This document shows positions 1,803 to 15,084 of a stretch of 64,000 bases of DNA, piece after piece. Location: positions 124,001-188,000 of IMG/VR virus record IMGVR_UViG_3300044630_006293. One strand, written 5' to 3'. The notes beneath the pieces were generated by a model that worked only from the letters and a program-made list of their open reading frames with translations, made no database searches and had not been told where the DNA came from. The translations under genes and the position numbers were made by a program. Positions within the stretch are counted from its first letter, which is position 1, and the number at the start of each line of letters is the position of its first letter.

Positions 1803-2444
1803 TTATACCTCATACCAGTGTTGGTTATTTGCTACATAAGAGTATAGCGCAAGATCAACAATATAGGAAATAGAAGAAATATCTTGGCGTGTTACTTTGA
1901 TAGAATCAACAGAAATTGGAGACTTCATATCAGGAATATAAGCTCCAGTATCTGAAACTCGTGCAGTAAAATGGCCAGCTTTCCATACAAAAGCATTAGA
2001 ATCATAAGTATCACCAGAAGACCAGTGATGTGCCTTGAAGATTCTAGATACAGGCTTTCCATCAATCTTTCCGCCACCATAGGAAGCATAAGCTTCTGGT
2101 GTAGGTATTCCTAATCTATCATTTGCAGGATATATATCAGCTGCAGTTCCAAGAGTAATTGATTTAAGATAAGCAGCAAAGTCAACAGCGTCAACATAAA
2201 GCTGAGTGTGTCCTAATAACTTTCCATCAGGAGAAGTTTTACCAATATCTATTTTAAATTTCATACCAGTAAACCAAGGGCGAATAGAAAGAAATCCGCT
2301 TTGGGTTTTAGATCTAAACCACTTCTTATAAAGATCATTTTCGTAATCTTTATCATCTTTAGAAAAGACTTTTTCAGGGGAATTAGAATCGTCATCAAGG
2401 GTAGTTAAAAACTCTTGAACAGATTCATAAACTTCATCTGACAT
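1803..2444 (-). CDS. hypothetical protein
   Basis: 213-aa ORF with AAAGGAGA SD upstream. Confidence 0.75.
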   Translation of the reverse strand: MSDEVYESVQEFLTTLDDDSNSPEKVFSKDDKDYENDLYKKWFRSKTQSGFLSIRPWFTGMKFKIDIGKTSPDGKLLGHTQLYVDAVDFAAYLKSITLGTAADIYPANDRLGIPTPEAYASYGGGKIDGKPVSRIFKAHHWSSGDTYDSNAFVWKAGHFTARVSDTGAYIPDMKSPISVDSIKVTRQDISSISYIVDLALYSYVANNQHWYEV

Positions 2445-2459
2445 TTTTATATCTCCTTT

Positions 2460-4073
2460 TTAATTTGAAATAGGAATCTTTGCGAAGGAATTCCTGGCAA
2501 TTGAACGATTTGGATTAAGTACATTTTGTGCTTCTGTGTATTGATCAGTAGAAGCCCAGTCCCACTGATCAAGAGCTGTTCTATACAATTCTTGAATCAT
2601 TGGTCGAGACTTATTCCAAAGAATATTTCTCATTTTAGAAACATGAGAAAGTATATCTTGAGTATTGATTGCTCTGAGCTCAGAGGAACTAACAAAGAAT
2701 TTAACTTCTGAAATAAGACTCTTAATTTCTGCACCGGTAAAGTACTGAGTTGCATTTGCTAATGCTTCAGTATTATACACATGGGGTGTATTTATTCCAG
2801 AAAGGTAAATTGAAAAGATAGATTGACGCTCTTCAAGAGAAGGAAGGCCAACAAATAAAATTTTATCAAAACGATCTGCGCGTAACATCTCTGGCTTAAG
2901 ATGCTCAAGCTGATTAGCTGCACACATCAAGAAAACATTTTCAGGAAGTTCCTGAAGACCAGTAAGAAATTCTCCATGAACACGATCAGTCGTGCCACCA
3001 TCTACCTGGGAAGAACTTTGTCCACCAGATAGATCTCGACCAAATTCGTCAATCCAAACACATAATGGGGCCATAGCATTGATCTGTTTAAATACTGCGC
3101 GCATATTAGCTTCTGATTGACCGATATAAGAGTTCATGACTTGACTAATGCCGGTGCGAGCAAGATCTAGACCAAGAGCATTTGCAGTTGCCTCACAGAT
3201 GGCAGATTTACCAGTGCCCGGAATACCAACCATAAGCATGCGTCTGATTGGGGAAATTCCAAATTGCTTAGCTTGTTCAGGATTATGCCAAAGGTTAGCG
3301 TTTCTAGAAATAAGATCTTTAATAAAATCAAGACCACCAATATTATCAAAAGTAATTTGAGGTTTAATAATCTCTAGGATGCCGTTCTTCTTGACTGAGC
3401 TCATTTTCTGCTCATAAATATAATCAGCAGAAACTTCACCAGTTTCAAGAACAGAGGTCAAAGCAAGATTAATAAACTCAGTTTCAGAAAGGCCCAAAGC
3501 AGAAGAAGCAATAGCTTTGTAATCAGATGTAACAAGTTGATTATTAGAAGAAGAATTTATGTGAGCAAGTACTGTAACAAAATCTTCTATAGAAGGATAC
3601 TCAGTTTCTATAGAGTTAAACAAATGAGCAAAATTTTCTGGAGCAGAAAAATGAGAAACAATAATATATTGAATAGGCATAGAAGCAAGATCATTAGACC
3701 AAAATGCTTCACGATAAGTTACATTAGCGTTATTAAAAAGACCTGCGTACATTTCTACAAAGCCATCAGGATTTGAAAAAACATCAAACATAAATGTCTT
3801 TTGAGTTTCTATTTCATATTTAGAAATAAAATCATGAGCAACAGAAAAATCAAAAGTTACTTTCTTAATAACCTGAGCTGGATCATCTGGACTAGGCATG
3901 TCGACTAGAACGGGTTTCCATGATCCGTTTTTATATTGACAAAAACCGTTGATAGGATCAATGATAAAGTAACTACGATCAGAAAAATTAACGATTGATT
4001 CTAAAGCCTTAGAGGTATCCATCGTCTTAACCCACAAAGATGGGTAACCAAGTTTAATTTGAGAAAAAAGCAT
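2460..4073 (-). CDS. AAA+ ATPase (Ycf46/SpoVK/Cdc48-like; degenerate N-terminal part plus one intact AAA module)
   Basis: Walker A GIPGTGKS, Walker B VWIDE, second region of homology MLRADRFD, NIGGLD lead-in. Confidence 0.9.
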   Translation of the reverse strand: MLFSQIKLGYPSLWVKTMDTSKALESIVNFSDRSYFIIDPINGFCQYKNGSWKPVLVDMPSPDDPAQVIKKVTFDFSVAHDFISKYEIETQKTFMFDVFSNPDGFVEMYAGLFNNANVTYREAFWSNDLASMPIQYIIVSHFSAPENFAHLFNSIETEYPSIEDFVTVLAHINSSSNNQLVTSDYKAIASSALGLSETEFINLALTSVLETGEVSADYIYEQKMSSVKKNGILEIIKPQITFDNIGGLDFIKDLISRNANLWHNPEQAKQFGISPIRRMLMVGIPGTGKSAICEATANALGLDLARTGISQVMNSYIGQSEANMRAVFKQINAMAPLCVWIDEFGRDLSGGQSSSQVDGGTTDRVHGEFLTGLQELPENVFLMCAANQLEHLKPEMLRADRFDKILFVGLPSLEERQSIFSIYLSGINTPHVYNTEALANATQYFTGAEIKSLISEVKFFVSSSELRAINTQDILSHVSKMRNILWNKSRPMIQELYRTALDQWDWASTDQYTEAQNVLNPNRSIARNSFAKIPISN

Positions 4074-4181: not shown

Positions 4182-4439
4182 TTAACCCTTTTCGCCTGCA
4201 CGGCGGTGGAACTCTACGTTGTCATTTGCTCCAACAACATAGTCTTCATCAAGCTTATCTTTACCTTTGTAAGCTACAGCGTCTGAAGGAATTCCCCAAA
4301 GCTTGGAAAACTGTTCACGGATATCCTTTACAGTCTTTCCTGAAACTGGAGCAGGCTGTGTGTAAACACCAAAGCGAACGTTGGCCATCTGACCAGACGA
4401 AGGCTGTGATGCTGCACCGGAATTGTTAATTGCAGTCAT
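4182..4439 (-). CDS. prokaryotic ubiquitin-like (beta-grasp) protein, PRTRC protein C-like
   Basis: 85 aa ending EFHRRAGEKG (C-terminal Gly); directly downstream of E1, JAB and E2 genes. Confidence 0.85.
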   Translation of the reverse strand: MTAINNSGAASQPSSGQMANVRFGVYTQPAPVSGKTVKDIREQFSKLWGIPSDAVAYKGKDKLDEDYVVGANDNVEFHRRAGEKG

Positions 4440-4452
4440 TTTATTCTCCTAA

Positions 4453-5208
4453 TTAGTTATTAACAGTAGATACTAGAGATGGACGACGATCATAAGGTTC
4501 TGCTTTGCCAATTGCAAGGTCAAAGTAAATCTCTGCTTCGTCAGGGCTTTGTTTGGCAACAATTGTTTTCTGAACTCTTCCAAGCAAATATGCAGCAACA
4601 GCCATATTTGTAGCAAGAATTTGAGTCCCTCCTTCAATTGATGCGCGTTCCTGGCAAGATAACTCTCCTGGATTTTTATCAGGAGGATTATCATATTCAG
4701 GATGGTTATTCACTGGATGGTCAGTAACGTCATAGCCGTCACGACGTTGATAATGATAGATGCTACCAAAAAGAGCATCATCATTTCCACCAGTAAAAAT
4801 ATCAATATTATTTAATTGAGATGCAGCGTCAAACAAAATTTTACGAGCAGCAAAATTATCTACAACTGCAAATACAACATCATTCTCAGAGATTAAAGAA
4901 GAAGCTTTAATCTTAGGAGACTCTTCATCTGCAACACCAGCAAAGTTGTCATCAACAACCCATTTAGGAACTGGAATAAAAGTTGTATTGTCAAATTGTT
5001 GAGTTAATCTATGAGCTGTAGCAATTGCTTTATTTCCCATTTGAGTAAAAGATTGACGTTCTTTATTGCGCTCTTCATAAGTATCGCCATCAACAATTAT
5101 AAGAGCAGAACCAGGATACTTATACTCTAATAAACGAGCAAGACCGTCAGCAAGCCATGTGCCAATGCCTCCAGCTCCAACAAGAACAAACCTTTTTTGC
5201 TCAGTCAT
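4453..5208 (-). CDS. ThiF/E1-like Ubl-activating enzyme
   Basis: GAGGIG nucleotide-binding loop, VDGD..EERNKERQ, MGNKA, VDNFAARK; candidate catalytic Cys in ELSCQER. Confidence 0.92.
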   Translation of the reverse strand: MTEQKRFVLVGAGGIGTWLADGLARLLEYKYPGSALIIVDGDTYEERNKERQSFTQMGNKAIATAHRLTQQFDNTTFIPVPKWVVDDNFAGVADEESPKIKASSLISENDVVFAVVDNFAARKILFDAASQLNNIDIFTGGNDDALFGSIYHYQRRDGYDVTDHPVNNHPEYDNPPDKNPGELSCQERASIEGGTQILATNMAVAAYLLGRVQKTIVAKQSPDEAEIYFDLAIGKAEPYDRRPSLVSTVNN

Positions 5209-6874
5209 AATAATATTCTCTTTCTGCTATATAGTCAAATTCACTTTTTGAATTTTTGTAATGAACAAATGAAGCACAAACATCAATTGGATCATTTATT
5301 GTGAATCCTTCTTGAACAAAATCTACGATAGCTTCTTTAAAAGAAGGGCAAGAAACATCATAATAATTTACACAATTAAAACAATCAGTTTCTATTTGAT
5401 AAACAAATCTTTTTTTGTGAGCTTCATCAAACTCTTTAATGTTAGATTCTGTAACAGTTTTCTTACATGAACAAAGATGAACATCAGTAAGGTTAACACC
5501 ACAGCAAAGAGTTTTTTCTTCATAAACAAAATCATCATCTGGAACAACATCGGATCCAGCTGCAAAAGGATCTAATCCTTGAGGTTTAATATTTAAAAGA
5601 AAATTAGAAACAGGATTATGTTCATCTACACAGTAGATATAATAACCAACATTGGGATCCAGTGCTCTACTGGAACAATAGTGATGAATCATAGTGATGA
5701 TGTCATACTGTCCCATATCTTGAGTAATTATAGGAGTGTCGCAAGTTGGACAAAATCCAGACTTAATTGCTTGAAGTTCTAAAGGAAAAGAACAAATCAA
5801 GCAATCAGCTGACATAACAGATTCAAGATCAATCTCAATTGCAACAATAGAATCATGAGGAATAGAATCTAATTCTTTTAGAAAAATAGATTTATCAAAT
5901 GATTTATGGGTAGTAGTTTCCGTACCAGCTGTCGTAGGTTGCGAGTTGGGAGGTTGTTGAGCCCACATCTTTTGGTACGACTGGGTTTGTGTAAGAGTAG
6001 CCTGAGTAGCCTGAGTAGCCGAACCCCCCATATTGAGGGGTTGGACTTTTTTTACTTTTTGGGTCCATTCTACAACCTCAGGATCAGGTGATTTAGATAC
6101 AAAAAGTGGCTCAAAAACATCTTCTGGCTTAAGGGTAAAAGCAGTTCCGCCCATTTGAAGCTCTATATGATATTGAGTTGCTCCATTGTTAACAGTCTTT
6201 TGCCAACCATAAGTAATATGAATGCCATCAAAGTCTGCTTGATCTTCATGATCTGTGCCAGATGCATATGCAGGCATATCAGGATGAGAGTGAACAGAAC
6301 CAACAATCATAGCTTCATCTGGTTTAATAGCAACAATGCTATCAGCATCGTACTTGCAATGAACAGAAGTGTTTTGTTGTTCAGGAACTAGCACACCCCA
6401 TCCATCAGGTCCTTCTTTAGTTGGATCATAAGTAAGTATTACGATAGATTCAGTATGATGTTGCGCGTCAACTAAGCGGAAGAATTCATCAAGCTTATCT
6501 ACAATAGTCCGAGGAATGTAAGGCATTGTATATTGTGCAACTTCTTCAACAGATGCAAAGTTTGAACCTAAAGGATCAGAAGAATCTGATACAGAACGAC
6601 CAACAAAGTTATTGACAACTTTAAGAATAGAAGGAGCATAACTTACAGAAGTAGACTGTGTTACAACTCCTTTTGAATCTTTAGTCTGAACATTTTTGTA
6701 AGTTGCTTTATCGCAAATTAAATAATAAATTTGAAATCCAAATGATTCAATTACTTCACAAATATCATCTACGACTTCCCAGTTGTTTGCAACGAAACAA
6801 GGGGCACCGTTAGACATCCAGAAATAATTCATATCATCTAGAGTGTAGTTAACTACATTCTCTACTGTAGACAT
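5201..6874 (-). CDS. JAB/MPN+ metalloprotease (deconjugase) with Cys-rich C-terminal extension
   Basis: E...GSVHSHPDMPAYASGTD JAMM motif; several CxxC motifs in the C-terminal half. Confidence 0.88.
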   Translation of the reverse strand: MSTVENVVNYTLDDMNYFWMSNGAPCFVANNWEVVDDICEVIESFGFQIYYLICDKATYKNVQTKDSKGVVTQSTSVSYAPSILKVVNNFVGRSVSDSSDPLGSNFASVEEVAQYTMPYIPRTIVDKLDEFFRLVDAQHHTESIVILTYDPTKEGPDGWGVLVPEQQNTSVHCKYDADSIVAIKPDEAMIVGSVHSHPDMPAYASGTDHEDQADFDGIHITYGWQKTVNNGATQYHIELQMGGTAFTLKPEDVFEPLFVSKSPDPEVVEWTQKVKKVQPLNMGGSATQATQATLTQTQSYQKMWAQQPPNSQPTTAGTETTTHKSFDKSIFLKELDSIPHDSIVAIEIDLESVMSADCLICSFPLELQAIKSGFCPTCDTPIITQDMGQYDIITMIHHYCSSRALDPNVGYYIYCVDEHNPVSNFLLNIKPQGLDPFAAGSDVVPDDDFVYEEKTLCCGVNLTDVHLCSCKKTVTESNIKEFDEAHKKRFVYQIETDCFNCVNYYDVSCPSFKEAIVDFVQEGFTINDPIDVCASFVHYKNSKSEFDYIAEREYYYD

Positions 6875-6915
6875 AAAACTCCTAAAATATTAATTGGTTG
6901 TGTTTTTTATTGATA

Positions 6916-8760
6916 TTAAAATGGATTATCGTAATCAATAACAGGATCATAAGAATAACTATGATTTTTGTCATGAGAATTTTTATTGTAGTTTTCAACA
7001 TGAAACTTATTAAAATTATCAAATGAAACAGGAGTAAAACTAATAGTTGGAGAAGAGTCTGGAGCAAAATTAATTATTGCACAAGATTTACAAACTCCAA
7101 ATACATCTATATCAAAAGTTTCATCATCGTTTAATGGAACAGTCATTGTAGTTTTGGGGCATTCAATAGAATCTTCTAAGAGATTATTCTTAAGAATTCC
7201 ACAAGGACAAACATAAGATTTTGCTTTGCAATTGTTACAGAAATAAATTTTATTTATATTTGTACTAGCAAATGGTTCATCTCCAGAGTAATCTAGAAAT
7301 GGAACAGAAACAATTTGCTCAAATGCTTGAGATTCTAAAATAGATTTTTTACAAGTATTGCAAGAGTAACACTCAAGAGAGTTATCCTTAGCATATTGCT
7401 CTACACAGTTTTGACAAATAGTGGATTCGGAATCTTCAGGATGCCAAACTTCTTTAATTACTTTGTTGGTACCGCTGTCTGCCCAGTCTTCGCCACATGT
7501 GTCGCAGGAAACAATAGTATCAAATGTCTTATGATAATACTCATTAGAAGTTTCAACATAATAAACAGAGTCATCATCTACATTGAAATGGGCATCAACC
7601 GATTTGATGTGAATAAAATACTCTTCGAAACATCCTTGACAAATTGAATTTTCATAATAATCTTTATTTTCATATTCATCTTTCTCATAAGATTCTCCAC
7701 AAGCATCGCAATTAAAATAAGCTGTTTCAGGAAGATTTGTATGATCAGTAGGTGAATCAAGTAAAGAAGAGTTAGAAAAAATAGAAGATCCAGTTTTATT
7801 CTTAATGTCTTCAGAAGACTGAAATGTATTATTTAATAAAGAGTTTTTCTTAGATGCGCTATTGTAAGATAGTGCAAAGTAAGAAAGAACAGACTCAGAA
7901 GCAAGTTCTTTGTCCGGGCGGATCACAGCATTGATAGGTTTGGTTTTAGTACTATCATGATAGTATGCTTGGTAATCGCCAACTAAAGCGTCAGCAAAAG
8001 TTAAATGCTGACCGTTAGGGTCATGCTTATCTTGATTATCCATTGATTCTACAAGAACTGGTATCCAAAGAGATTCATCTAAGGTCCATGCATAACCTTC
8101 ATTATTAGATTTATCTTGCCATTCAGTAGGGTTTGATAAATAAGATGGTTTATTATTTTCAATATAAAAACGAGTTCCATCAGTCTCAGACATGTTAGCA
8201 TCGTTGTAAGTTTCTACACCTGAACAACGCTCAATAAACCTTGAAATTCTCTCATTAAGTGGAAGTTCAGACCAATCTTCATTCCTATATAAACAAATCC
8301 ATCCAACACCATTTCCGCGATAACCCTTGCAATTAATGTTTGGAAGATTTACATGGTAAAGCTTTTGAGTAGGATGAGTTATAGGATAAGGAGAGTAGAA
8401 CATCCTTGCACCTAAAAGGTTGCCATGTTCCATATCGCAGATAATAATACGATATGGTTGAGCAACGTAGTACGCTGTTGCAGGAGCACCCTCTGCAGCA
8501 GCCCAGTTTACGTGATATAAACCTGGCTTATGCTGATAGGCAAACTGGCTATAAGTGCCAGCTGTGCGAATTGAAAGGGTTCCAGTTCCGTCTACTGGAA
8601 GTAGTCCGGTATCCCAAGCAGCATACTGAGAGAAATGAGAATAAAAAGAAACAATATCTTTTTCGGTAACATGGTCAAGGTTAAAAGACTTGACAGTAGA
8701 TTGAACGGATATATTCCCCTCTTCTTTATGAACAATGGAATAGTTTATTTTATCAGACAT
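6916..8760 (-). CDS. prokaryotic E2-like (family D / PRTRC protein B-like) enzyme fused to a multi-CxxC region
   Basis: LYHVNLPNIN...GWICL resembles the E2_D catalytic-Cys region; operon context; more than 6 CxxC pairs C-terminally. Confidence 0.75.
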   Translation of the reverse strand: MSDKINYSIVHKEEGNISVQSTVKSFNLDHVTEKDIVSFYSHFSQYAAWDTGLLPVDGTGTLSIRTAGTYSQFAYQHKPGLYHVNWAAAEGAPATAYYVAQPYRIIICDMEHGNLLGARMFYSPYPITHPTQKLYHVNLPNINCKGYRGNGVGWICLYRNEDWSELPLNERISRFIERCSGVETYNDANMSETDGTRFYIENNKPSYLSNPTEWQDKSNNEGYAWTLDESLWIPVLVESMDNQDKHDPNGQHLTFADALVGDYQAYYHDSTKTKPINAVIRPDKELASESVLSYFALSYNSASKKNSLLNNTFQSSEDIKNKTGSSIFSNSSLLDSPTDHTNLPETAYFNCDACGESYEKDEYENKDYYENSICQGCFEEYFIHIKSVDAHFNVDDDSVYYVETSNEYYHKTFDTIVSCDTCGEDWADSGTNKVIKEVWHPEDSESTICQNCVEQYAKDNSLECYSCNTCKKSILESQAFEQIVSVPFLDYSGDEPFASTNINKIYFCNNCKAKSYVCPCGILKNNLLEDSIECPKTTMTVPLNDDETFDIDVFGVCKSCAIINFAPDSSPTISFTPVSFDNFNKFHVENYNKNSHDKNHSYSYDPVIDYDNPF

Positions 8761-8775
8761 ATAAAAACCTCGTTG

Positions 8776-9165
8776 TTATAGTTCGATTATATTAGAAAGA
8801 TCTTCGTCAATCTCGTTTGAATAATCAGAAAAAGTAGTGGTAAACCAAATAGGATCGGCTTCAAGAAGTTTAAGAACATTCATTCTAGATTTAAGATCTT
8901 CTTGAATATTAACAAGATCAGCAAGACGATCAATAGCTTTAGCCATCTTCTTTAAATCAGATTTTTGATTGGTAGCTCTCAATACAAAATGTAGAACAGG
9001 AACATCGTCATAAACAAAATGTTCTATTATTTTATTTACTCTAGAGTTAACTTGTTCAAGTTGAGATTCAAGATTCTTTTGAGCTGTTTTACCAGCAGCA
9101 AAAGAAAATGGAAACTTATCAATAGCAGTAATTCCTTGTGGAATTTTTTCTGGATAAGAATTCAT
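8776..9165 (-). CDS. hypothetical protein
   Basis: 129-aa ORF immediately upstream of the E2 gene. Confidence 0.7.
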   Translation of the reverse strand: MNSYPEKIPQGITAIDKFPFSFAAGKTAQKNLESQLEQVNSRVNKIIEHFVYDDVPVLHFVLRATNQKSDLKKMAKAIDRLADLVNIQEDLKSRMNVLKLLEADPIWFTTTFSDYSNEIDEDLSNIIEL

Positions 9166-9462: not shown

Positions 9463-9918
9463 CTATGCTAATTGAGCTTTAGCTGAACGATACTTGTTAC
9501 CGTCAGAACCAAAATAGTTAGAAACTATTTCAAAAGCAAGGATAAATAAGAGTGGAAAAATAGAGAATAAATTATAGTAAAAATTAAATATTATAAAGAA
9601 TAAAGTAAAAAGAATAGCAAAAGCCGGACCGGCAATTAAGACTGCTGGAGAATCTTTTATGTTTAAATTTTTAATCCTTGTAATTCCAATAACAAATGGA
9701 AATAAAGGAATAAAGTATGGGAGATCAGGATTTGCTTTTCTTTTGCGCGCAACAAAATAATGGCCAAGCTCGTGAACGAACAAGGCCATAATCATTACGA
9801 AAATTACAGGGTTATTAAAAATAGCATAATTAATACCTGCAGTACCCATAAGGGTACCTATCATTAAAAAAAAATGAGATAATGTTTTTCTATTTGTTTT
9901 TTGAAAATATCTCTTCAA
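9463..9918 (-). CDS. M50 / site-2 protease family membrane metalloprotease
   Basis: HELGH (HExxH) in a hydrophobic segment, IAGP motif, SDG motif. Confidence 0.8.
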   Translation of the reverse strand: MKRYFQKTNRKTLSHFFLMIGTLMGTAGINYAIFNNPVIFVMIMALFVHELGHYFVARKRKANPDLPYFIPLFPFVIGITRIKNLNIKDSPAVLIAGPAFAILFTLFFIIFNFYYNLFSIFPLLFILAFEIVSNYFGSDGNKYRSAKAQLA

Positions 9919-10582
9919 TGTTCCTCTCCAAAGTCTCTTTTAAGTTATCGTGATCCTTCGTAAAGTGCTTGATGTACAAATCATTAATCACTTGAGATGA
10001 ATCAGTAATAGTTTCGGAGTCTTTAGTTAGGTCGCAAAGATCTTCATTAATTTCAGTGCCACTTACTTGACAAAGAGACTTGTACAATGCAACCTCATGC
10101 CAGAATGTGTGAACTTGAATGTTATAATAACTTCTAAAAAACATAGCAAAATAGTTTTTTGTAAAATTAATATCTTCAGAATTAGCTTTAATAACTGTAT
10201 CTGCAGTATCGCTATTTAAAACAATGTTGAGAAAACTAATAATAGTCTTCTTACGAGCAAGAGATTCTTTGCAAAGTTCTATGCGATGGCGATAAACAAA
10301 TTGACCATTTGTAATTAATACAAGTTCATTTAGAATAGCGGAAGTATTTGCTTCCCGGTATCCCTGATTAACCCACTCGTGAGCAGCACGGTAAAAAGCT
10401 TCGCTGAAATTTACCTTGAGTGAAGAATCCCGGAGCAAAGATTTAAATGGTGAATCTATATCAGAGAATACTTTATCTACAGTGTTAGCATTTAGATCAC
10501 TATCGTAGGAGGAATTAGTTGAAGAATCAGAATCAACATATTCCTCAAAGAGGTCATCGTCGTTTGAATAAATGTTAGACAT
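9890..10582 (-). CDS. hypothetical protein
   Basis: 230-aa ORF; contains two in-frame CGG-G codons in an uninterrupted frame. Confidence 0.75.
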   Translation of the reverse strand: MSNIYSNDDDLFEEYVDSDSSTNSSYDSDLNANTVDKVFSDIDSPFKSLLRDSSLKVNFSEAFYRAAHEWVNQGYREANTSAILNELVLITNGQFVYRHRIELCKESLARKKTIISFLNIVLNSDTADTVIKANSEDINFTKNYFAMFFRSYYNIQVHTFWHEVALYKSLCQVSGTEINEDLCDLTKDSETITDSSQVINDLYIKHFTKDHDNLKETLERNIEEIFSKNK

Positions 10583-10985
10583 TAAGTTCCATATCTGTAA
10601 GTTTATAATTTAAAATATCTGCTATTGCTGTATTTTTGGTTTTACCAATACGGTCAATATAAGACAAAAGATAATCTGATTGATCTTTATTGAAAGATGA
10701 TAAATCTGAATTTAATACATTTCTAACAAGAACAAATCTTTGTTCTTCAGTAGAGCCACCCCATACTCCATAGTATGAGTATGTCATTGCTTCATAAAAG
10801 CATTCGGATCTTACTGGACAAGATTTACAAAGATTTATAGCAGAATTTATTAATTCTGATTTTGGAGTAACAAAGAATAAATCTGTAGCTTCAGTGGCAC
10901 AAGCAGATCTATCTCTCCATTTCATTTCTGAAGGAGCGATTGAAAAAGGATCTTTGGTGCCTTTTATTTTAGGACTGCGATTCAT
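10575..10985 (-). CDS. whiB: WhiB-family transcription factor
   Basis: C...DLFF...CKSCPVRSEC...GVWGG four-Cys Wbl signature. Confidence 0.92.
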   Translation of the reverse strand: MNRSPKIKGTKDPFSIAPSEMKWRDRSACATEATDLFFVTPKSELINSAINLCKSCPVRSECFYEAMTYSYYGVWGGSTEEQRFVLVRNVLNSDLSSFNKDQSDYLLSYIDRIGKTKNTAIADILNYKLTDMELNV

Positions 10986-11253: not shown

Positions 11254-11266
11254 GATTTTCTCCTTG

Positions 11267-11340
11267 TACCGCACACGGGAATTGAACCCGTCGATGGATG
11301 TTTATAAGACATCTGTGTTCAACCAGCTCACCCGTGCGGT
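11267..11340 (-). tRNA. tRNA-Ile(UAU)
   Basis: ACCGCAC/GTGCGGT acceptor stem, GATGT-CTTATAA-ACATC anticodon arm, GGTTCAATTCC T loop; CCA not encoded. Confidence 0.85.
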
Positions 11341-11681
11341 GCGCGAACACATAGCATCTATGTTATTTTGTTTAGATATTATATAAGATATAAAAAAGAA
11401 AAACAACCTGAGATCATTTTTTGTATGAATAAAGAAAAAATAAATTGATGGTAGGTAGTGTGGCGATATGGGGCCACTGACATCACTACTTTGTCCGTCA
11501 TGAAGTCATTGAATCTTTGCTTTTTTAAAAGTTTTGAATAAATGATTACATAGTCAGCTACCATCAAACTTAATTAGTTAGCGGTGATGCCAGGAGATAT
11601 GGGTCCCACGTGCTTAAGTACATCATTCACGTATTTCATAAGTCATAAACTTAAGTTGAACACGCCACTAACTAAAATCAG

Positions 11682-12059
11682 TTAATTCTTTTTTCTTGGA
11701 CGAGGAACATCCTCGCCGGCAGCCCATCGCTCAAAAAGCTCTGGGGATAGATCGTTTACCCAAAGAGGAAAACCAAATCTATCATTTCTAACAATAAAAT
11801 CTTCTCTAGTGAGAAGTCTCCTGAGTTTTGGATTTCCATCTTTATCTAAGATGGGACGACCATTTTTATCATAACCTTGATATTTTAGATGAGGATTATC
11901 TTTGCAATAAAGAAAATGCATAGAAGTATTGTATGATACATACGCATCTATTCTATCCATAATTTCAAGGTTCTTGTAGTATTGATCTAGTATTTTATTT
12001 CTAGCAGAAAGAGATGGGATGGTTATATTGCTTTTATAAGAAGAACTTCTATTTAGCAT
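11682..12059 (-). CDS. hypothetical protein
   Basis: 125-aa ORF. Confidence 0.7.
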   Translation of the reverse strand: MLNRSSSYKSNITIPSLSARNKILDQYYKNLEIMDRIDAYVSYNTSMHFLYCKDNPHLKYQGYDKNGRPILDKDGNPKLRRLLTREDFIVRNDRFGFPLWVNDLSPELFERWAAGEDVPRPRKKN

Positions 12060-12523
12060 ATTTGAAATCCACCACAGTTTTCTAAAAACTGTTGAAATTC
12101 AACAACAAGATCATAGTCCATATGATAATGAGTTGAAAAATTAGATACTTTTAAAGTGCCATTACAAGAATTGCATTGAAGAGTCTTAGATGTTCCATCA
12201 GCTTGAAGCCAAACACGAACGCCTAATCCTTCGCAGTATTGACAATCTTCTAATGGTAAAGAATCAAGATCAGCTTTATATTTTTTTATGTATGATTGTA
12301 TGGTTCCATCTTCTAAATCTTTTTTTAAAAGTTTAGAAAGAGTTATAGAATCTTTAGCATTTAAACCAGAACCAGAATTGTCATGAGGAGATTCACATTT
12401 GCGACAAATATTGGGATGAAGTTCTTCTAGGCAATCCCATAAAGGGTGCCAGTACCAAACATTAGCGCGAAAGTATTCGCCCTGTTCGTTCTTTGGCTTT
12501 GTGCCATAAACATCCATTCCCAT
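12053..12523 (-). CDS. hypothetical protein with DnaJ-type CxxCxGxG zinc finger
   Basis: CQYCEGLG...CNSCNGT. Confidence 0.7.
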   Translation of the reverse strand: MGMDVYGTKPKNEQGEYFRANVWYWHPLWDCLEELHPNICRKCESPHDNSGSGLNAKDSITLSKLLKKDLEDGTIQSYIKKYKADLDSLPLEDCQYCEGLGVRVWLQADGTSKTLQCNSCNGTLKVSNFSTHYHMDYDLVVEFQQFLENCGGFQIC

Positions 12524-12532
12524 AGTTAACTC

Positions 12533-12796
12533 CTATACAGTATAAACGTCGCCATTTTCTTTGATTTTTATATCTTCATATGGAGCTGCAATTCGACGAT
12601 AAAGTTCAAGCTTTGCACATTCTAAAACTCCAATAACATCATTTATAGAAGAGTAAGATTTACCTTTACTATAGATGTATTGATCAATTGCGCGAGTGAC
12701 TAAATAGTTAAGCTCTCCTGGAGTTTCAATACTACGTCCTGCATAAACAAGTTTTTGGTTGATGTCAGATCTTTTTTTCTTAGATACGTATGGCAT
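12533..12796 (-). CDS. conserved phage hypothetical protein
   Basis: PGELNY...LECAKLELYRR..APYED.KI.ENGDVY pattern recalled from many phages; no function. Confidence 0.75.
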   Translation of the reverse strand: MPYVSKKKRSDINQKLVYAGRSIETPGELNYLVTRAIDQYIYSKGKSYSSINDVIGVLECAKLELYRRIAAPYEDIKIKENGDVYTV

Positions 12797-13050
12797 TATT
12801 CATCCTTGTTATTATAGAAGCTCCAAATTTGATCATCATAAACAACAGGAATAATCTCTGTTTCTAAATGAGTAATTTCAACTGGAGTTGTATCGACATT
12901 TTGATTGGTTGAGTTTATTTTATTTTGAAGACGTAAAATTAAACGACGAATTCTATCTTGTTCTTTTGGAATCCAAGATACATCAGATCTTTTATTTAAA
13001 GCTTCAACAATAATTTCAATATCATCTTGGTTAAGATTATATCTAGGCAT
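12796..13050 (-). CDS. hypothetical protein
   Basis: ORF, probable start MPRY. Confidence 0.55.
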   Translation of the reverse strand: MPRYNLNQDDIEIIVEALNKRSDVSWIPKEQDRIRRLILRLQNKINSTNQNVDTTPVEITHLETEIIPVVYDDQIWSFYNNKDE

Positions 13051-13354
13051 TGAGTTCCTCACGATAATAAAGGTCAGGATACTTGTCTCGAAGAATGTCA
13101 ATGGGATTGTACCAGTACTGGTCCTTAGGACAGGTTGGTGAAATCAAAAGCTCTACAGCGCAATGAATGCGTTGATTTTTTGGATCTTCAAAGAAATCAT
13201 CAAGTTCTTTGTAGTTTTTAAAAGGGCCAAAGAAAACACGGTCGGTTGACCGACAATGATGAACTATCCATTGATAATGAGGAAGTTCTTCTTCTTGTTT
13301 ATTTAATTCTTGTTTTTTATTTAAGTTGAATAAATTATAAATAAATTTTTTCAT
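13043..13354 (-). CDS. hypothetical protein
   Basis: ORF start trimmed to MKKF just after the tRNA. Confidence 0.6.
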   Translation of the reverse strand: MKKFIYNLFNLNKKQELNKQEEELPHYQWIVHHCRSTDRVFFGPFKNYKELDDFFEDPKNQRIHCAVELLISPTCPKDQYWYNPIDILRDKYPDLYYREELNA

Positions 13355-13356
13355 AG

Positions 13357-13430
13357 TGGGCTCTGTGGGACTTGAACCCACGACCAACGGATTATGAGTC
13401 CGGCGCTCTAACCAACTGAGCTAAGAGCCC
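13357..13430 (-). tRNA. tRNA with CAU anticodon (probably Ile2, lysidine-modified; elongator Met not excluded)
   Basis: GGGCTCTTAGCTCAGTTGGTTAGAGC...GACTCATAATCC...GGTTCAAGTCC...AGAGCCCA cloverleaf. Confidence 0.9.
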
Positions 13431-13434
13431 GTAT

Positions 13435-13599
13435 TTATTTGTAACCGTTTTTGGAGTTTCTTGCTCCGTATGTACATTTATGATTTTCGTGCCACATTTG
13501 CACATGTTCCCATTTGTGCCAGCGAAATGATTTCCGGCGACACTTTGTACACATTCCACGAAAGCTTTTATTAATACTTATATTTAATAGTGTTTCCAT
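13435..13599 (-). CDS. small Cys/His-containing protein (54 aa)
   Basis: Manually translated METLL...CTKC...HKC...GYK*; contains an in-frame CGG-A. Confidence 0.4.
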   Translation of the reverse strand: METLLNISINKSFRGMCTKCRRKSFRWHKWEHVQMWHENHKCTYGARNSKNGYK

Positions 13600-13689
13600 T
13601 TACTTAATTTTATTCTGTTTATAAAACAAATTAACTCGGAAAAATTAACATGATTGTATGTCACTGCATAACATTAATCAAATGTAATA

Positions 13690-13890
13690 TTAAAGCTTAC
13701 CAGCTCCTGGAAAGTAGCTTTTTAATTGTACAGACAAGAACATAAGTTCAGGGTATTCATACTTGTCATAGGAAGTATTTACTTCAAGTAAATCTTCAAG
13801 CTCTTTAGTGATCATCCGAACTGCAAGAGCGTCATCTTGAAATTCACCAGGAATGTTCATGGTTATTTCAGCAGTAAATTTAACTTTCAT
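13690..13890 (-). CDS. hypothetical protein
   Basis: 66-aa ORF. Confidence 0.55.
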   Translation of the reverse strand: MKVKFTAEITMNIPGEFQDDALAVRMITKELEDLLEVNTSYDKYEYPELMFLSVQLKSYFPGAGKL

Positions 13891-14043
13891 GAGTAGGTGT
13901 AGCCTCTTCTGATAATAATAAATAAAGACGAATATCCAATAATAAGTCAGTCATCTCAGATGACGAAACAAGCTGTTGACCTGAAATGTCTTTAATAGCT
14001 TGATCAACAAGTTGAACAGCATTCTTGTTTGGGTCTAATACCA

Positions 14044-14322
14044 TTATGCTTCTCCCCCGCGTTTTTTATACATAGTAACCGCTTCTTCTATATTAAGGCA
14101 ATAGTCACCAGATTCGCAAGACCATCCTTCTGGCCTAGCTATGATAGTCCATACTACGTATGGGTGATATTCAGCTTCTAAAGTGCATATAGCAATCCAA
14201 CTAGCGTAAGAATCGTTTTTAACTCTTTCTCTCATTTTAGTGAGAGCAATAACTATACGGTCGGTGTGACCAACAACATCGCCAATGCGAAGTTCTTTAT
14301 CCTCGTTAAGAGTATCAATCAT
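14044..14322 (-). CDS. hypothetical protein
   Basis: 92-aa ORF with GAGG SD. Confidence 0.65.
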   Translation of the reverse strand: MIDTLNEDKELRIGDVVGHTDRIVIALTKMRERVKNDSYASWIAICTLEAEYHPYVVWTIIARPEGWSCESGDYCLNIEEAVTMYKKRGGEA

Positions 14323-14324
14323 TT

Positions 14325-14510
14325 TTAATTACCTCGAAAAGATGTTTCATTCTTTTTAGATTTTTTTATCTTATAACCATTACGTTTAAGATCAGCAATA
14401 ATTTTTTCTGGAATATCTTGCCAAATAGGAATTCCGCAAGAAGTTAAAGTATGAGCAATGATGTCACACTTTTTTTTATGATGTAAATTAATCATGAGAA
14501 TTGCCTCCAA
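14325..14510 (-). CDS. hypothetical protein
   Basis: 61-aa ORF. Confidence 0.5.
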   Translation of the reverse strand: MEAILMINLHHKKKCDIIAHTLTSCGIPIWQDIPEKIIADLKRNGYKIKKSKKNETSFRGN

Positions 14511-14811
14511 AGTTAACTTTAATTACATTATCAGAAGAAGATTCTTCTGGCTTATCGTAAGAGTGATAGTACACCAATCTGGCGTCAGAACAATAATATG
14601 AACTAGAAGCTGGGTGATTTCTCTTTGATTCTAAAAGATTTTCTTCTAAAAAATCATCACGGTAAATATGTAATACTTTTTCGTTAGATATAATGATATC
14701 TAAACGATATCCATCTGGAGAGACAAAACAAGAAAGTGCTTCTTGAATATCTTCTTGATGATGATGTACTTGGCCATCATTAGTTCTAGTAGAAAAATTA
14801 GCTTTTGTCAT
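14488..14811 (-). CDS. hypothetical protein
   Basis: ORF start trimmed to MTKA after tRNA-Asn. Confidence 0.55.
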   Translation of the reverse strand: MTKANFSTRTNDGQVHHHQEDIQEALSCFVSPDGYRLDIIISNEKVLHIYRDDFLEENLLESKRNHPASSSYYCSDARLVYYHSYDKPEESSSDNVIKVNFGGNSHD

Positions 14812-14813
14812 AG

Positions 14814-14886
14814 CTCCCAGAGTAGGGGTCGAACCTACGACAAGCGGATTAACAGTCCGCTGCTCTGCCAACTGAGCTATCTGGGA
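14814..14886 (-). tRNA. tRNA-Asn(GUU)
   Basis: TCCCAGA/TCTGGGA acceptor, GCGGA-CTGTTAA-TCCGC anticodon arm, GGTTCGACCC T loop. Confidence 0.93.
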
Positions 14887-15000
14887 ATGCATTAAGAGTT
14901 TCTTAGCAAACTGCTGCACGAATAAGTGCACCAATATAAAGACCGACAGAGATTCCAGTAATGAATACTAATACATATAAGACATTGTGTTTTTGCATAG

Positions 15001-15084
15001 TACCCGAGACCGGACTTGAACCGGTACGCCCTTTCGAGCGAGAGAGTTTAAGTCTCTTGCGTCTGCCTATTCCGCCACTCGGGT
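15001..15084 (-). tRNA. tRNA-Leu(UAA)
   Basis: ACCCGAG/CTCGGGT acceptor, AGAGA-CTTAAAC-TCTCT anticodon arm, long variable arm. Confidence 0.92.

What the first reader, a model, noticed from the sequence alone, without database searches (positions are those of the whole stretch)
4182..8760. Phage-encoded complete ubiquitin-like conjugation operon (E2, JAB, E1, Ubl)
Seen: four co-oriented, tightly spaced genes with an E2_D-like Cys motif, JAMM HSH..S..D, ThiF/E1 GxGGxG plus SC, and a beta-grasp protein ending AGEKG. Established: such cassettes (PRTRC-like) occur on bacterial mobile elements with unknown function, and related Bil/Bub systems are host anti-phage defences. Inference: a lytic phage carrying the whole cascade may tag host proteins, tag competitor virions, or counter host Ubl/Pup pathways.
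Basis: partly seen in the sequence, partly recalled or inferred. Interest (0 to 1): 0.8.

Follow-up and report, generated by a model that had tools for sequence, protein, structure and literature searches.

The report
Phage ubiquitin-like tagging gene cassette
A large freshwater phage carries four adjacent genes that together look like a small ubiquitin-style protein-tagging machine. It is a very divergent version of an already catalogued but never tested bacterial and plasmid cassette, and relatives sit in cultured phages where its function could now be tested.

Summary
On the minus strand of 4182-8760 lie four tightly packed genes. They encode a 614-aa protein with an E2-like N-domain, a JAB/JAMM peptidase with an intact E...HxHx7SxxD site, a ThiF/E1 adenylyltransferase, and an 85-aa beta-grasp protein ending in an invariant ...GEKG.

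E1, JAB and the Ubl are solid. The E2 call is only indirect. There is no Pfam hit and no E2 match in a PDB fold search. However, a profile comparison links it (96.6%) to Bacillus phage WH1 gp214, whose relatives match Pfam Prok-E2_D, and the invariant Cys156 aligns with that family's Cys.

The cassette is a divergent relative of the PRTRC / "6d" Ubl-JAB-E1-E2 operons predicted in 2006 and never tested. Phage copies are already public, including a full PRTRC annotated in Ralstonia phage Dina. In WH1 the Ubl gene is a five-repeat polyubiquitin-like gene.

In all 37 full-length related jumbo-phage loci the order g129-E2-JAB-E1-Ubl-AAA+-g213 is kept. The host is probably a freshwater actinobacterium, because the phage encodes WhiB.

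The most likely function is real Ubl conjugation to unknown targets during infection. I rate it a new variant of a known, uncharacterised kind.

The parts
6916..8760 (-). 614-aa protein with an E2-like N-domain followed by a Cys-rich C-terminal half
   Evidence: ORF. There are 483 homologues, all without a Pfam domain, forming 202 clusters at 50% identity.
7861..8760 (-). E2-like N-domain (aa 1-300), a divergent relative of Prok-E2_D
   Evidence: hhalign against the WH1 gp214 family gives 96.6%, E 6.7e-10, over 214 columns. Five of 9 members of that family hit PF14460, best 5.3e-10. hhalign against PRTRC_B gives P 0.005. The Atlas lead is Prok-E2_D. The AF2 model has pLDDT 75, with no PDB E2 match.
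8287..8361 (-). Putative active-site loop LYHVNLPNINCKGYRGNGVGWICLY, with candidate catalytic Cys156
   Evidence: C156 is invariant in 50 diverse family members, while C144 is not. C156 aligns with the invariant Cys of the gp214 family; that Cys aligns with the invariant Cys of PRTRC_B in a separate, non-significant comparison (E 0.039, 38 columns).
6916..7860 (-). Variable Cys-rich C-terminal half of the E2-like protein, with seven CxxC pairs that look like zinc ribbons
   Evidence: CxxC positions. Two CxxC...CxxC units are kept in at least 80% of homologues. Median identity is 17% against 60% for the N-domain. No family hit.
5201..6874 (-). 557-aa JAB/JAMM metallopeptidase with a variable Cys-rich C-terminal half
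   Evidence: Pfam Prok-JAB 1.7e-5 over aa 128-225. NCBIfam PRTRC_A 0.0021. Catalytic residues are invariant in 38 homologues.
6251..6292 (-). JAMM zinc site HSHPDMPAYASGTD (HxHx7SxxD); the upstream Glu is at 6440-6454 (TESIV)
4453..5208 (-). 251-aa E1-like ThiF-family adenylyltransferase
   Evidence: Pfam ThiF 1.4e-13. PRTRC_ThiF 8.8e-9 is the best NCBIfam hit. A profile search of the PDB finds MccB, ThiF, SUMO-E1 and UBA enzymes at about 1e-10. GxGGxG, R51, Q52, D117, R122 and S184-C185 are invariant across the phage and PRTRC E1s.
4182..4439 (-). 85-aa ubiquitin-like beta-grasp protein ending ...EFHRRAGEKG
   Evidence: The AF2 core has pLDDT about 89. The top 50 Foldseek PDB matches are all ubiquitin, NEDD8 or Ubl structures, prob 1.0. 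The C-terminal Gly is invariant; 28 of 32 sequences end at that Gly and 4 carry a 2-aa extension. hhalign against one WH1 Prok_Ub repeat gives 77%, E 2e-5.
8776..9165 (-). Conserved 129-aa ORF directly upstream of the E2-like gene; function unknown and membership uncertain
   Evidence: Present upstream of the E2-like gene in every related locus that covers that position, including all 37 full-length ones. No family hit. No similarity to PRTRC E/F or WH1 gp212/213.
2460..4073 (-). Classic-clade AAA+ ATPase (537 aa), syntenic downstream neighbour; functional link unproven
   Evidence: Pfam AAA 3e-24; PAN/CDC48/FtsH-type hits in NCBIfam; phrog_8638 3.5e-68. It follows the Ubl in all 37 full-length loci, but about 2 kb of other genes intervene in L054 and L057. 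Homologues are common in phages without the cassette.
1803..2444 (-). Conserved 213-aa ORF downstream of the AAA+ gene; function unknown, probably not part of the system
   Evidence: Synteny. The only lead is a Whirly/PurA-like fold.

Best explanation
The four genes encode a self-contained ubiquitin-like protein-conjugation module of the PRTRC / '6d' lineage, made by a freshwater jumbo phage during infection.

Proposed steps (all inferred unless marked):
1. The E1 (ThiF fold; ATP site GxGGxG, R51, D117) adenylates the exposed C-terminal Gly85 of the 85-aa beta-grasp protein. It probably then holds the protein as a thioester on the invariant Cys185.
2. The Ubl passes to the invariant Cys156 of the E2-like N-domain.
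3. From there it is transferred to a lysine of one or more target proteins. The fast-evolving Cys-rich C-terminal halves of the E2 and JAB proteins are the best candidates for target recognition, acting as a built-in E3-like or adaptor function.
4. The JAB metallopeptidase removes short C-terminal extensions where they exist and reverses or edits the conjugates.

Shown here: the folds and families, the catalytic motifs and their invariance, the free C-terminal Gly, and the conserved gene order. Inferred: every chemical step, the E2 role, and the existence of protein targets.

The target and biological purpose are unknown. The cassette sits in a long leftward operon of non-structural genes (WhiB, helicase, tRNAs) and has a conserved catalytic core with variable recognition parts. 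I therefore lean towards modification of host or phage proteins during takeover rather than virion building.
For: - E1: Pfam ThiF 1.4e-13; the best NCBIfam hit is PRTRC_ThiF; adenylation residues and the SC cysteine are invariant across phage and PRTRC E1s; it belongs to the E1 superfamily by PDB profile search.
- JAB: full JAMM motif, invariant in 38 homologues.
- Ubl: predicted ubiquitin fold. The C-terminal ...GEKG is invariant; 28 of 32 sequences end at the Gly and 4 carry 2-aa extensions, as Ubl precursors do.
- Ubl homology: it is homologous to the repeat unit of WH1 gp211. That protein is five head-to-tail Prok_Ub repeats, each ending AGTKG, plus a C-terminal cap. This polyubiquitin-like layout implies cleavage after the Gly.
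- E2: homologous to the gp214 family (96.6%), whose members match Prok-E2_D, with the invariant Cys aligned.
- Gene order E2-JAB-E1 is the same as PRTRC B-A-ThiF.
- JAB and E1 overlap by 8 nt.
- The block is kept in all 37 full-length loci, with E1 and Ubl the most conserved at 51-84% and 42-85% identity.
- There are no sulfur-transfer partner genes among the neighbours scanned.
Against: - No direct E2 evidence exists. There is no Pfam or NCBIfam hit for the window protein or for 50 diverse relatives. Foldseek against the PDB found no E2 (best E 0.095). The loop that holds Cys156 has pLDDT below 50.
- No Prok-E2_D structure or biochemistry exists to anchor the assignment.
- The His downstream of the Cys that is conserved in PRTRC-type E2s (Iyer 2006) is replaced by Asn here.
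- The Ubl tail is ...GEKG, not GG.
- No E3, target or conjugate is known.
- Archaeal SAMP and Urm1 systems conjugate with an E1 alone, so an E2 step is not obligatory.
- Transcription evidence is only four short contigs in one lake RNA library.
Confidence: 0.6

Rival explanations
1. E2-independent tagging or sulfur-carrier chemistry. The E1 activates the Ubl, which is then either thiocarboxylated to deliver sulfur (ThiS/MoaD/TtuB-like, for example for thiolation of the phage's tRNAs or a cofactor) or attached to proteins directly from the E1, as in archaeal SAMPylation or urmylation. The JAB only matures the Ubl, and the 'E2-like' protein has another role such as adaptor or Ubl binder.
For: The Atlas places the Ubl nearest to ThiS-family clusters. 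E1 hits include ThiF, MoeB and the SAMP E1 UbaA at 1e-4 to 1e-5. JAB-processed sulfur carriers are established from my own knowledge of CysO/Mec+ and QbsE/QbsD. The phage encodes 4 tRNAs. E2 status is not directly demonstrated.
Against: No rhodanese, cysteine desulfurase, ThiG/MoaE, or tRNA thiolase was found among the neighbours scanned. The E1 lacks a rhodanese domain. The E2-like N-domain is strongly conserved (median 60% identity) with an invariant Cys that aligns to the Prok-E2_D Cys. The closest named relatives are PRTRC-type, not biosynthetic, ThiF proteins. A five-fold poly-Ubl in WH1 fits a conjugated tag better than a cofactor carrier.
Confidence: 0.17
2. The module is coupled to the adjacent AAA+ ATPase as a phage-encoded tag-and-unfold (proteasome-like) pathway. 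Ubl-tagged host or phage proteins are recognised by the variable N-domain of the PAN/Cdc48-type AAA+ and are unfolded or passed to a protease.
For: A classic-clade AAA+ (PAN, CDC48, FtsH and Mpa-type hits) follows the Ubl gene in all 37 full-length loci. Its N-domain is variable (37% identity) while the ATPase is conserved (68%). The same window also encodes a Clp-type ATPase and an S8 protease.
Against: In distant relatives L054 and L057 about 2 kb of unrelated genes separate the Ubl and AAA+ genes. WH1, Arash and Dina carry the cassette without this AAA+. Homologous AAA+ genes are common in phages that lack the cassette. A 108-nt gap separates the two genes here. No Ubl-binding domain is recognisable.
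Confidence: 0.1
3. The cassette is a conflict system: superinfection exclusion against competing phages (Bil-like tagging of their virion proteins) or counter-defence against host Ubl or Pup-type systems. These are the first reader's ideas.
For: Bil and CBASS show that bacterial Ubl systems act in phage conflicts (PMC11601603, PMC10557695, bioRxiv 10.1101/2023.09.04.556158). The recognition parts are hypervariable. The likely actinobacterial host (WhiB) belongs to a phylum that uses Pup, from my own knowledge.
Against: The module looks like a fixed core block rather than a patchy accessory. It is present wherever a related contig covers the region, and its E1 and Ubl are very conserved. There is no sequence link to Bil, Bub or CBASS components beyond the shared E1 Rossmann fold. 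Countering a host tag would need only the peptidase.
Confidence: 0.13

Closest known systems
PRTRC system (NCBIfam TIGR03734-03742), equal to operon type '6d' of Iyer, Burroughs & Aravind 2006 (PMC1779556): Ubl (Prok_Ub), E2-like (Prok-E2_D), JAB and ThiF-type E1 on plasmids, ICEs and some phages
   Same: It shares the four-protein core and the gene order E2-JAB-E1. PRTRC_ThiF and PRTRC_A are the best NCBIfam hits. The invariant SC cysteine in the E1 is shared. The Ubl ends in a ...KG motif, as PRTRC_C domains do: GRKG|A in Dina and VQVKG|A in Ahniella. The E2 Cys aligns.
   Different: All scores lie far below the curated cut-offs (35 against 144.75 bits; 17.6 against 101.8 bits). There is no ParB and there are no PRTRC D, E or F proteins. 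The JAB lacks the DUF2016 N-domain. The E2 lacks the conserved downstream His and does not hit PF14460. The Ubl gene lies after the E1 and ends at the Gly instead of carrying a long C-terminal extension. Both E2 and JAB have long variable Cys-rich C-terminal halves. It lies in jumbo-phage genomes of about 160-210 kb (one contig of 268 kb looks chimeric). PRTRC itself has no experimentally known function.
E2_D-JAB-ThiF cassette of Bacillus jumbo phages vB_BceM_WH1, Edson and KLEB27-3 (gp211-gp216 in WH1); also Salmonella phage Arash gp248c-246c and Acinetobacter phage ME3
   Same: These phages belong to the same distant lineage (portal 34-39% identity). The E2 N-domain is homologous (96.6%; Foldseek BFVD finds a 241-aa protein at E 3.7e-7). 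JAB and E1 are detectable by tblastn. The Ubl unit is homologous. The order E2-JAB-E1 is the same.
   Different: In WH1 the Ubl is a 5-repeat polyprotein placed upstream, with two extra genes (gp212, gp213) between it and the E2. The E2 is only 241 aa, without the Cys-rich half. There is no adjacent AAA+ or g213. The hosts are Bacillota or Proteobacteria, not the probable Actinobacteria of this phage.
Bil (BilABCD), Bub and type II CBASS Cap2/Cap3: the bacterial Ubl-conjugation pathways with experimental proof (PMC11601603, PMC11601596, PMC10557695, PMC10097602)
   Same: The logic is the same: E1 adenylation, E2-like cysteine, JAB-type or other peptidase, and a Ubl or Ubl-like C-terminus. All are carried on mobile DNA and act in phage-host biology.
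   Different: There is no family-level match. Only the E1 Rossmann region gives weak hits to CBASS E1-E2 models (best 4.6e-5, residues 4-74). E1 and E2 are separate proteins here. Those systems are host defences, whereas this one is a conserved phage module.
ThiS/MoaD-ThiF/MoeB sulfur-carrier pairs and archaeal SAMP/UbaA
   Same: A small beta-grasp protein with a C-terminal Gly is activated by a compact ThiF-type E1 of about 250 aa.
   Different: The tail is GEKG, not GG. There is no sulfurtransferase or synthase partner nearby. An E2-like protein and a JAB are present in one operon.

Membership tests
PRTRC system (NCBIfam TIGR03734-03742) | ThiF-family protein reaching the PRTRC_ThiF model cut-off | tested here: not met
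   35 bits against a cut-off of 144.75, although it is the best NCBIfam hit at E 8.8e-9.
PRTRC system (NCBIfam TIGR03734-03742) | PRTRC_A (DUF2016 plus JAB) reaching its cut-off | tested here: not met
   17.6 bits against 101.8. Only the JAB part aligns and there is no DUF2016.
PRTRC system (NCBIfam TIGR03734-03742) | ParB-family protein and PRTRC proteins D, E and F in the cassette | tested here: not met
   No NCBIfam or Pfam hit for the flanking conserved ORFs g76, g129 and g213. There is no hhalign similarity of g129 or g213 to Dina PRTRC E/F or to the Ahniella neighbours.
PRTRC system (NCBIfam TIGR03734-03742) | Gene order B (E2) - A (JAB) - ThiF | tested here: met
   The window order is E2-JAB-E1, matching Ahniella and phage Dina B-A-ThiF.
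Pfam Prok-E2_D (PF14460), UBC-like E2 | HMM match at or above the gathering score | tested here: not met
   No hit at E<=0.1 for the window protein or for any of 50 diverse family members.
Pfam Prok-E2_D (PF14460), UBC-like E2 | Homology to bona fide members by profile-profile comparison | tested here: met
   A3 against the WH1 gp214 family gives 96.6%, E 6.7e-10, over 214 columns. Five of 9 members of that family hit PF14460, best 5.3e-10 (precomputed hits). The direct comparison with PRTRC_B is weaker: P 0.005, probability 7%.
Pfam Prok-E2_D (PF14460), UBC-like E2 | Invariant cysteine at the family's catalytic position | tested here: met
   C156 is invariant in the 50 sequences. It aligns with gp214 C147 and with PRTRC_B C174 (P 0.005; the gp214-to-PRTRC_B alignment is non-significant, E 0.039).
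Pfam Prok-E2_D (PF14460), UBC-like E2 | Absolutely conserved His C-terminal to the Cys (Iyer 2006, row 6d) | tested here: not met
   FTHxNH of PRTRC_B (H203, H206) aligns to YNDxNM in the phage family.
Pfam Prok-E2_D (PF14460), UBC-like E2 | UBC-like three-dimensional fold | tested here: inconclusive
   In the AF2 model (pLDDT 75, pTM 0.76) the order of secondary-structure elements (helix, beta-meander, long loop, helices) is compatible. Foldseek against the PDB gives no E2 (best E 0.095). No Prok-E2_D structure is in the PDB.
Pfam Prok-E2_D (PF14460), UBC-like E2 | Thioester formation with the Ubl | not testable with these tools
   Needs biochemistry.
JAB/JAMM metallopeptidase | E ... HxHx7SxxD zinc site and a family HMM match | tested here: met
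   Prok-JAB scores 25.1 bits against a cut-off of 25. The motif lies at aa 141-145 and 195-208 and is invariant in 38 homologues.
E1 / ThiF / MoeB adenylyltransferase superfamily | Rossmann-type ATP site (GxGGxG), Arg finger and catalytic Asp; HMM above the cut-off | tested here: met
   ThiF scores 51 bits against a cut-off of 28.1. G11-G16, R51, D117 and R122 are invariant. PDB E1s match at about 1e-10.
E1 / ThiF / MoeB adenylyltransferase superfamily | Catalytic cysteine forming an E1~Ubl thioester | tested here: inconclusive
   S184-C185 is invariant in phage and PRTRC E1s. Its equivalence to the catalytic Cys of canonical E1s was not shown, because the PDB alignments stop before it.
Ubiquitin-like beta-grasp modifier (Prok_Ub, PF14454) | Beta-grasp fold | tested here: met
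   The AF2 core has pLDDT about 89. The top 50 Foldseek matches are all ubiquitin, NEDD8 or Ubl structures, prob 1.0, TM 0.5-0.7.
Ubiquitin-like beta-grasp modifier (Prok_Ub, PF14454) | Exposed, conserved C-terminal Gly | tested here: met
   ...GEKG is invariant. 28 of 32 distinct sequences end at the Gly and 4 carry +2 aa.
Ubiquitin-like beta-grasp modifier (Prok_Ub, PF14454) | HMM match to PF14454 | tested here: not met
   No hit at E<=0.1. The link is indirect: hhalign 77%, E 2e-5, to a WH1 gp211 repeat, which hits PF14454 (3.4e-27 for the whole protein).
Bil / Bub / CBASS Cap2-Cap3 | Family-level matches to their E1, E2 or peptidase models (E1-E2 fusion for Cap2) | tested here: not met
   Only weak E1-Rossmann hits to PADLOC E1-E2 models and to NCBIfam 6A-MBL cap2_3 at 0.0019. 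E1 and E2 are separate genes. PADLOC 2023 may lack Bil and Bub models.
ThiS/MoaD sulfur-carrier pathway | Partner sulfurtransferase or synthase (ThiG, MoaE, rhodanese, desulfurase) in the neighbourhood | tested here: not met
   None among the 18 neighbouring proteins scanned. The rest of the genome of about 211 kb was not scanned.

The most novel reading that the evidence does not exclude
A whole clade of freshwater jumbo phages, together with cultured Bacillus, Salmonella and Acinetobacter phages, depends on its own orthogonal ubiquitin-like conjugation pathway as a core infection function. The enzymes carry built-in, fast-evolving zinc-ribbon recognition modules. In this clade the pathway is coupled to a neighbouring PAN/Cdc48-type AAA+ unfoldase. 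This would amount to a virus-encoded tag-and-unfold system that remodels host or phage proteins, and it would be the first assigned function for the PRTRC/6d family.
Probability: 0.1. Interest if true: 0.9.

Novelty: new variant of a known kind. Interest (0 to 1): 0.58.

Why it matters
Ubl-E1-E2-JAB operons of the PRTRC/6d type were predicted in 2006 and are spread over plasmids, ICEs and phages. I found no experimental work on them, and the proven bacterial Ubl pathways (CBASS, Bil, Bub) are all host defences.

Here the cassette is a fixed, strongly conserved block in a large group of environmental jumbo phages, which points to a job in the phage's own infection cycle. The link I found to cultured phages gives tractable systems in which to ask what a virus of bacteria does with its own ubiquitin-like tag. 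These include WH1, Edson and KLEB27-3 with a polyubiquitin-like gene, as well as Arash, Dina and ME3.

If conjugation is confirmed, this would add a virus-side ubiquitin-like system to bacterial biology and give the PRTRC family its first function. If it is only sulfur transfer or an adaptor, the finding is an ordinary auxiliary gene set.

Tried and rejected
- Direct family assignment of the E2-like protein failed. Pfam, NCBIfam, PHROGs and PADLOC gave nothing. A Pfam scan of 50 diverse relatives gave no PF14460 hit. PDB profile searches found only a chance hit at E 1.3. Foldseek of the AF2 model against the PDB found nothing.
- hhalign of the E2 family against a single PRTRC_B sequence and against WH1 gp213 was not significant.
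- The near-DNA search against GenBank phages gave no match.
- A single-sequence PDB search with the E1 gave no hit, so a profile was needed.
- I looked for shared accessory proteins. g129 and g213 show no similarity to PRTRC E/F, WH1 gp212/213/218, Arash gp249c-251c or the Ahniella neighbours.
- The C-terminal Cys-rich halves of E2 and JAB are not similar to each other or to any Pfam family.
- The promoter and terminator scan was uninformative, with fewer promoter-like sites than in shuffled sequence.
- I rejected 'virion structural' as evidence. The WH1 gp211 annotation has no traceable basis. The Arash 'structural proteome' lists 116 of 272 proteins, including ribonucleotide reductases (PMC10585845), so it shows expression at most.
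- I rejected prophage or host-gene origin. Only 3 short, probably mis-binned MAG contigs among 185,579 species genomes carry the E2 family.
- Literature searches for PRTRC, Prok-E2 or phage-encoded E1/E2/JAB function found no experimental study.

Full report
**What is in the sequence**

The window is low-GC (about 35%) phage DNA.
- It encodes a portal protein (phrog_9232, 6.7e-53), a tail protein and a DNA helicase, and four tRNAs.
- It is identical over the region examined to IMG/VR contig 3300044630_006293, which is 210,831 bp.
- The portal is 34-39% identical to those of Bacillus jumbo phages 0305phi8-36, WH1, Edson and KLEB27-3 and of Moorella phage MTATph1.
- A WhiB gene (Pfam 6e-16) suggests an actinobacterial host, as for other freshwater whiB phages (PMC10914622).

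On the minus strand, 4182-8760 holds four ORFs of 614, 557, 251 and 85 aa. They are separated by 41 nt, an 8-nt overlap, and 13 nt. They lie inside a longer leftward run of genes. No intrinsic terminator or convincing promoter separates them.

**The three secure components**

*E1 (251 aa).*
- It is a ThiF/E1 adenylyltransferase: Pfam 1.4e-13, above the cut-off.
- Its best NCBIfam hit is PRTRC_ThiF at 8.8e-9.
- A profile of it finds MccB, ThiF, SUMO-E1 and UBA enzymes in the PDB at about 1e-10.
- I aligned it with homologues from true PRTRC systems (Ahniella plasmid, Ralstonia phage Dina) and from phages WH1 and Arash. The GxGGxG loop, D42, N48, R51, Q52, K60, D117, R122 and an S184-C185 pair are invariant.

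*JAB (557 aa).*
- It has a Prok-JAB domain (1.7e-5).
- It carries a complete JAMM site: Glu in TESIV, then HSHPDMPAYASGTD. The site is invariant in 38 distinct homologues.

*Ubl (85 aa).*
- It has no family hit.
- Its AlphaFold2 model (core pLDDT about 89) matches only ubiquitin, NEDD8 and Ubl domains among its top 50 PDB hits (prob 1.0, TM 0.5-0.7).
- Among 32 distinct homologues the tail EFHRRxGEKG is invariant. Twenty-eight end exactly at the Gly and four carry two further residues. This is the pattern of a modifier whose C-terminal Gly is the reactive end.

**The E2 question**

- The 614-aa protein has a highly conserved N-domain (aa 1-300). It has 483 close hits, which fall into 202 clusters at 50% identity among 1.84 billion representatives.
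- Neither it nor 50 diverse relatives hit any E2 family in Pfam or NCBIfam.
- An AF2 model (pLDDT 75, pTM 0.76) found no E2 in the PDB (best E 0.095).

The positive evidence is transitive.
- The protein-language Atlas pointed to viral clusters that partly carry PF14460, Prok-E2_D.
- Foldseek against viral models found a 241-aa protein at E 3.7e-7 and an Acinetobacter phage ME3 protein at 8e-4.
- Bacillus phage WH1 has a 241-aa gene (gp214) directly upstream of its JAB (gp215) and ThiF (gp216).
- Five of the 8 relatives of gp214 carry PF14460 (best 5.3e-10 in my own scan).
- The profile of the window's family aligns to the gp214 family with 96.6% probability, E 6.7e-10, over 214 columns.
- A direct comparison with a PRTRC_B profile is collinear over 188 columns but weak (P 0.005).
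- In all these alignments the motif L-Y-H-x-N-L-P-N pairs with L-F-H-A-P-L-P-N.
- In the alignments with the gp214 family and with PRTRC_B, Cys156 (GWICLY) pairs with the invariant Cys of the partner family. Cys156 is the only Cys invariant in 50 diverse members. The gp214-to-PRTRC_B alignment that closes the chain is itself non-significant (E 0.039, 38 columns).

The His that Iyer et al. describe as absolutely conserved after the Cys in this E2 class is Asn here. No structure of any Prok-E2_D protein exists in the PDB.

I therefore accept 'divergent Prok-E2_D homologue with a conserved Cys'. The claim 'E2 enzyme' remains an inference that rests on an earlier computational classification.

**What family this is**

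- The gene order E2-JAB-E1 equals the B-A-ThiF order of PRTRC systems on an Ahniella plasmid and in Ralstonia phage Dina.
- The window cassette fails every curated PRTRC cut-off. It also lacks ParB, the D/E/F proteins and the DUF2016 domain.
- It is therefore a distant variant, not a member.
- It is not a Bil, Bub or CBASS system.

**A useful by-product**

- WH1 gp211 lies two genes upstream of the WH1 E2-like gene. It consists of five near-identical 57-aa repeats, each ending AGTKG, followed by a 15-aa cap.
- It matches Pfam Prok_Ub at 3.4e-27 in five stretches. It is a polyubiquitin-like gene.
- The window's Ubl aligns end to end with one repeat (77%, E 2e-5).
- PRTRC_C proteins end their Ub domain with the same ...KG before an extension.
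- This supports both the Ubl identity and a processing role for the JAB peptidase.

**Distribution**

- E2-based searches of IMG/VR returned 50 loci. All 37 that are long enough keep the order g129-E2-JAB-E1-Ubl-AAA+-g213. They come from contigs of up to about 210 kb, plus one probably chimeric contig of 268 kb.
- Identity to the window proteins runs as follows:

| Protein | Identity range |
|---|---|
| E1 | 51-84% |
| Ubl | 42-85% |
| g213 | 36-82% |
| AAA+ | 43-73% |
| E2 | 39-66% |
| JAB | 37-57% |

- In a portal-based search, every related contig long enough and oriented to include the region also appears in the E2 list. Only three contigs were evaluable.
- Cellular genomes lack the family, apart from three short MAG contigs.
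- ThiF relatives with adjacent JAB and E2-like genes occur in cultured phages: WH1, Edson, KLEB27-3, Arash, Dina, Vibrio D69/D148/D181 and ME3.
- The Arash proteins were detected by MS in phage preparations (PMC10585845), which shows expression only.
- One lake metatranscriptome holds four short contigs identical to the Ubl, to the JAB/E1 junction and to the JAB 5' end. This is weak evidence of transcription.

**Anatomy beyond the core**

- The C-terminal halves of the E2 and JAB proteins are Cys-rich (seven and three CxxC pairs).
- They are far more variable than the catalytic parts: median identity 17% and 23% against 60% and 59%.
- They match no family and do not match each other.
- I read them as candidate recognition modules; this is inference.
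- The downstream AAA+ is of the PAN/Cdc48/FtsH clade with a variable N-domain.
- Other genes intervene between it and the Ubl in distant relatives. The cultured phages lack it, and similar ATPases are common in phages without the cassette. Coupling is therefore only a possibility.

**Mechanism and verdict**

The best-supported reading (about 0.6) has five parts:
- The E1 adenylates Gly85 of the Ubl.
- The Ubl is passed through Cys185 of the E1 and Cys156 of the E2-like domain.
- It is then attached to unknown proteins.
- The JAB matures the Ubl and reverses the conjugates.
- The module works in the non-structural, early or middle part of the infection programme.

The rivals are E2-independent tagging or sulfur transfer (0.17), coupling to the AAA+ as a tag-and-unfold pathway (0.10), and a phage-phage or anti-defence conflict role (0.13). 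The last two are special cases of conjugation rather than alternatives to it.

Novelty is moderate. The kind has been known on paper since 2006 and phage copies are already deposited. What is new is a strongly diverged variant, fixed in a large jumbo-phage clade, with enzyme-fused zinc-ribbon arrays and traceable cultured relatives.

Noticed in passing
L001:781-1680 (Bacillus phage vB_BceM_WH1 gp211; also phages Edson and KLEB27-3): This protein, annotated 'virion structural protein', is five head-to-tail 57-aa Prok_Ub repeats, each ending AGTKG, plus a 15-aa C-terminal cap. It is a polyubiquitin-like gene two genes upstream of an E2_D-JAB-ThiF cassette in a cultured phage.
   Followed up: partly
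L007 and L037 (IMG/VR contig 3300042868_009074, 267,766 bp, at 6-28 kb and 222-241 kb): One contig carries two different copies of the whole cassette, with E1 84% and 74% identical to the window. It is either a chimeric assembly of two related phages or a real duplication.
   Followed up: no
window 10575-10985 (-): A WhiB-family transcription factor (Pfam 6e-16) lies in the same leftward gene run. It points to an actinobacterial host, probably freshwater (PMC10914622).
   Followed up: partly
window 9463-9918 (-): A small membrane protein with an HExxH motif gives a partial Peptidase_M50 (site-2 protease) match at 3.5e-5, below the cut-off. It lies three genes upstream of the E2-like gene.
   Followed up: no
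window 11266-15084 (-): Four tRNA genes (Ile-TAT, Met-CAT, Asn-GTT, Leu-TAA) are interspersed with small ORFs.
   Followed up: no
window 15995-17425 (-) and 40167-41615 (+): The phage also encodes an S8 subtilase (2.1e-41) and a Clp-type AAA_2 ATPase with a ClpB_D2-small domain (8.5e-53). Together with the AAA+ at 2460-4073, these are three protein-remodelling or proteolysis genes in one 64-kb window.
   Followed up: no
window 1803-2444 (-): A very conserved 213-aa ORF (36-82% identity across the clade) has no family. The only lead is a weak Whirly/PurA-like ssDNA-binding fold.
   Followed up: partly
L063, L064, L065 (GTDB MAG contigs labelled Cyclobacteriaceae, Bacillota, Ectothiorhodospiraceae): The only 'cellular' hits to the E2 family are short contigs in MAGs of three unrelated phyla. 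They are most likely phage contigs binned by mistake.
   Followed up: no
L054:13601-15635 and L057:10083-12002: In the two most distant relatives, about 2 kb of extra genes sit between the Ubl and the AAA+. They comprise a 390- or 243-aa protein, a conserved 172-178-aa helical protein and a 75-85-aa protein.
   Followed up: no
L061:1519-4539 (Salmonella phage Arash gp248c-gp246c): These genes are annotated only as 'structural protein', 'hypothetical protein' and 'structural protein'. They are a weak Prok-E2_D (0.024), a JAB (1.4e-7) and a ThiF (7.8e-15) in the same order as in the window. The 'structural' label comes from a virion-preparation proteome that lists 116 of 272 proteins.
   Followed up: partly
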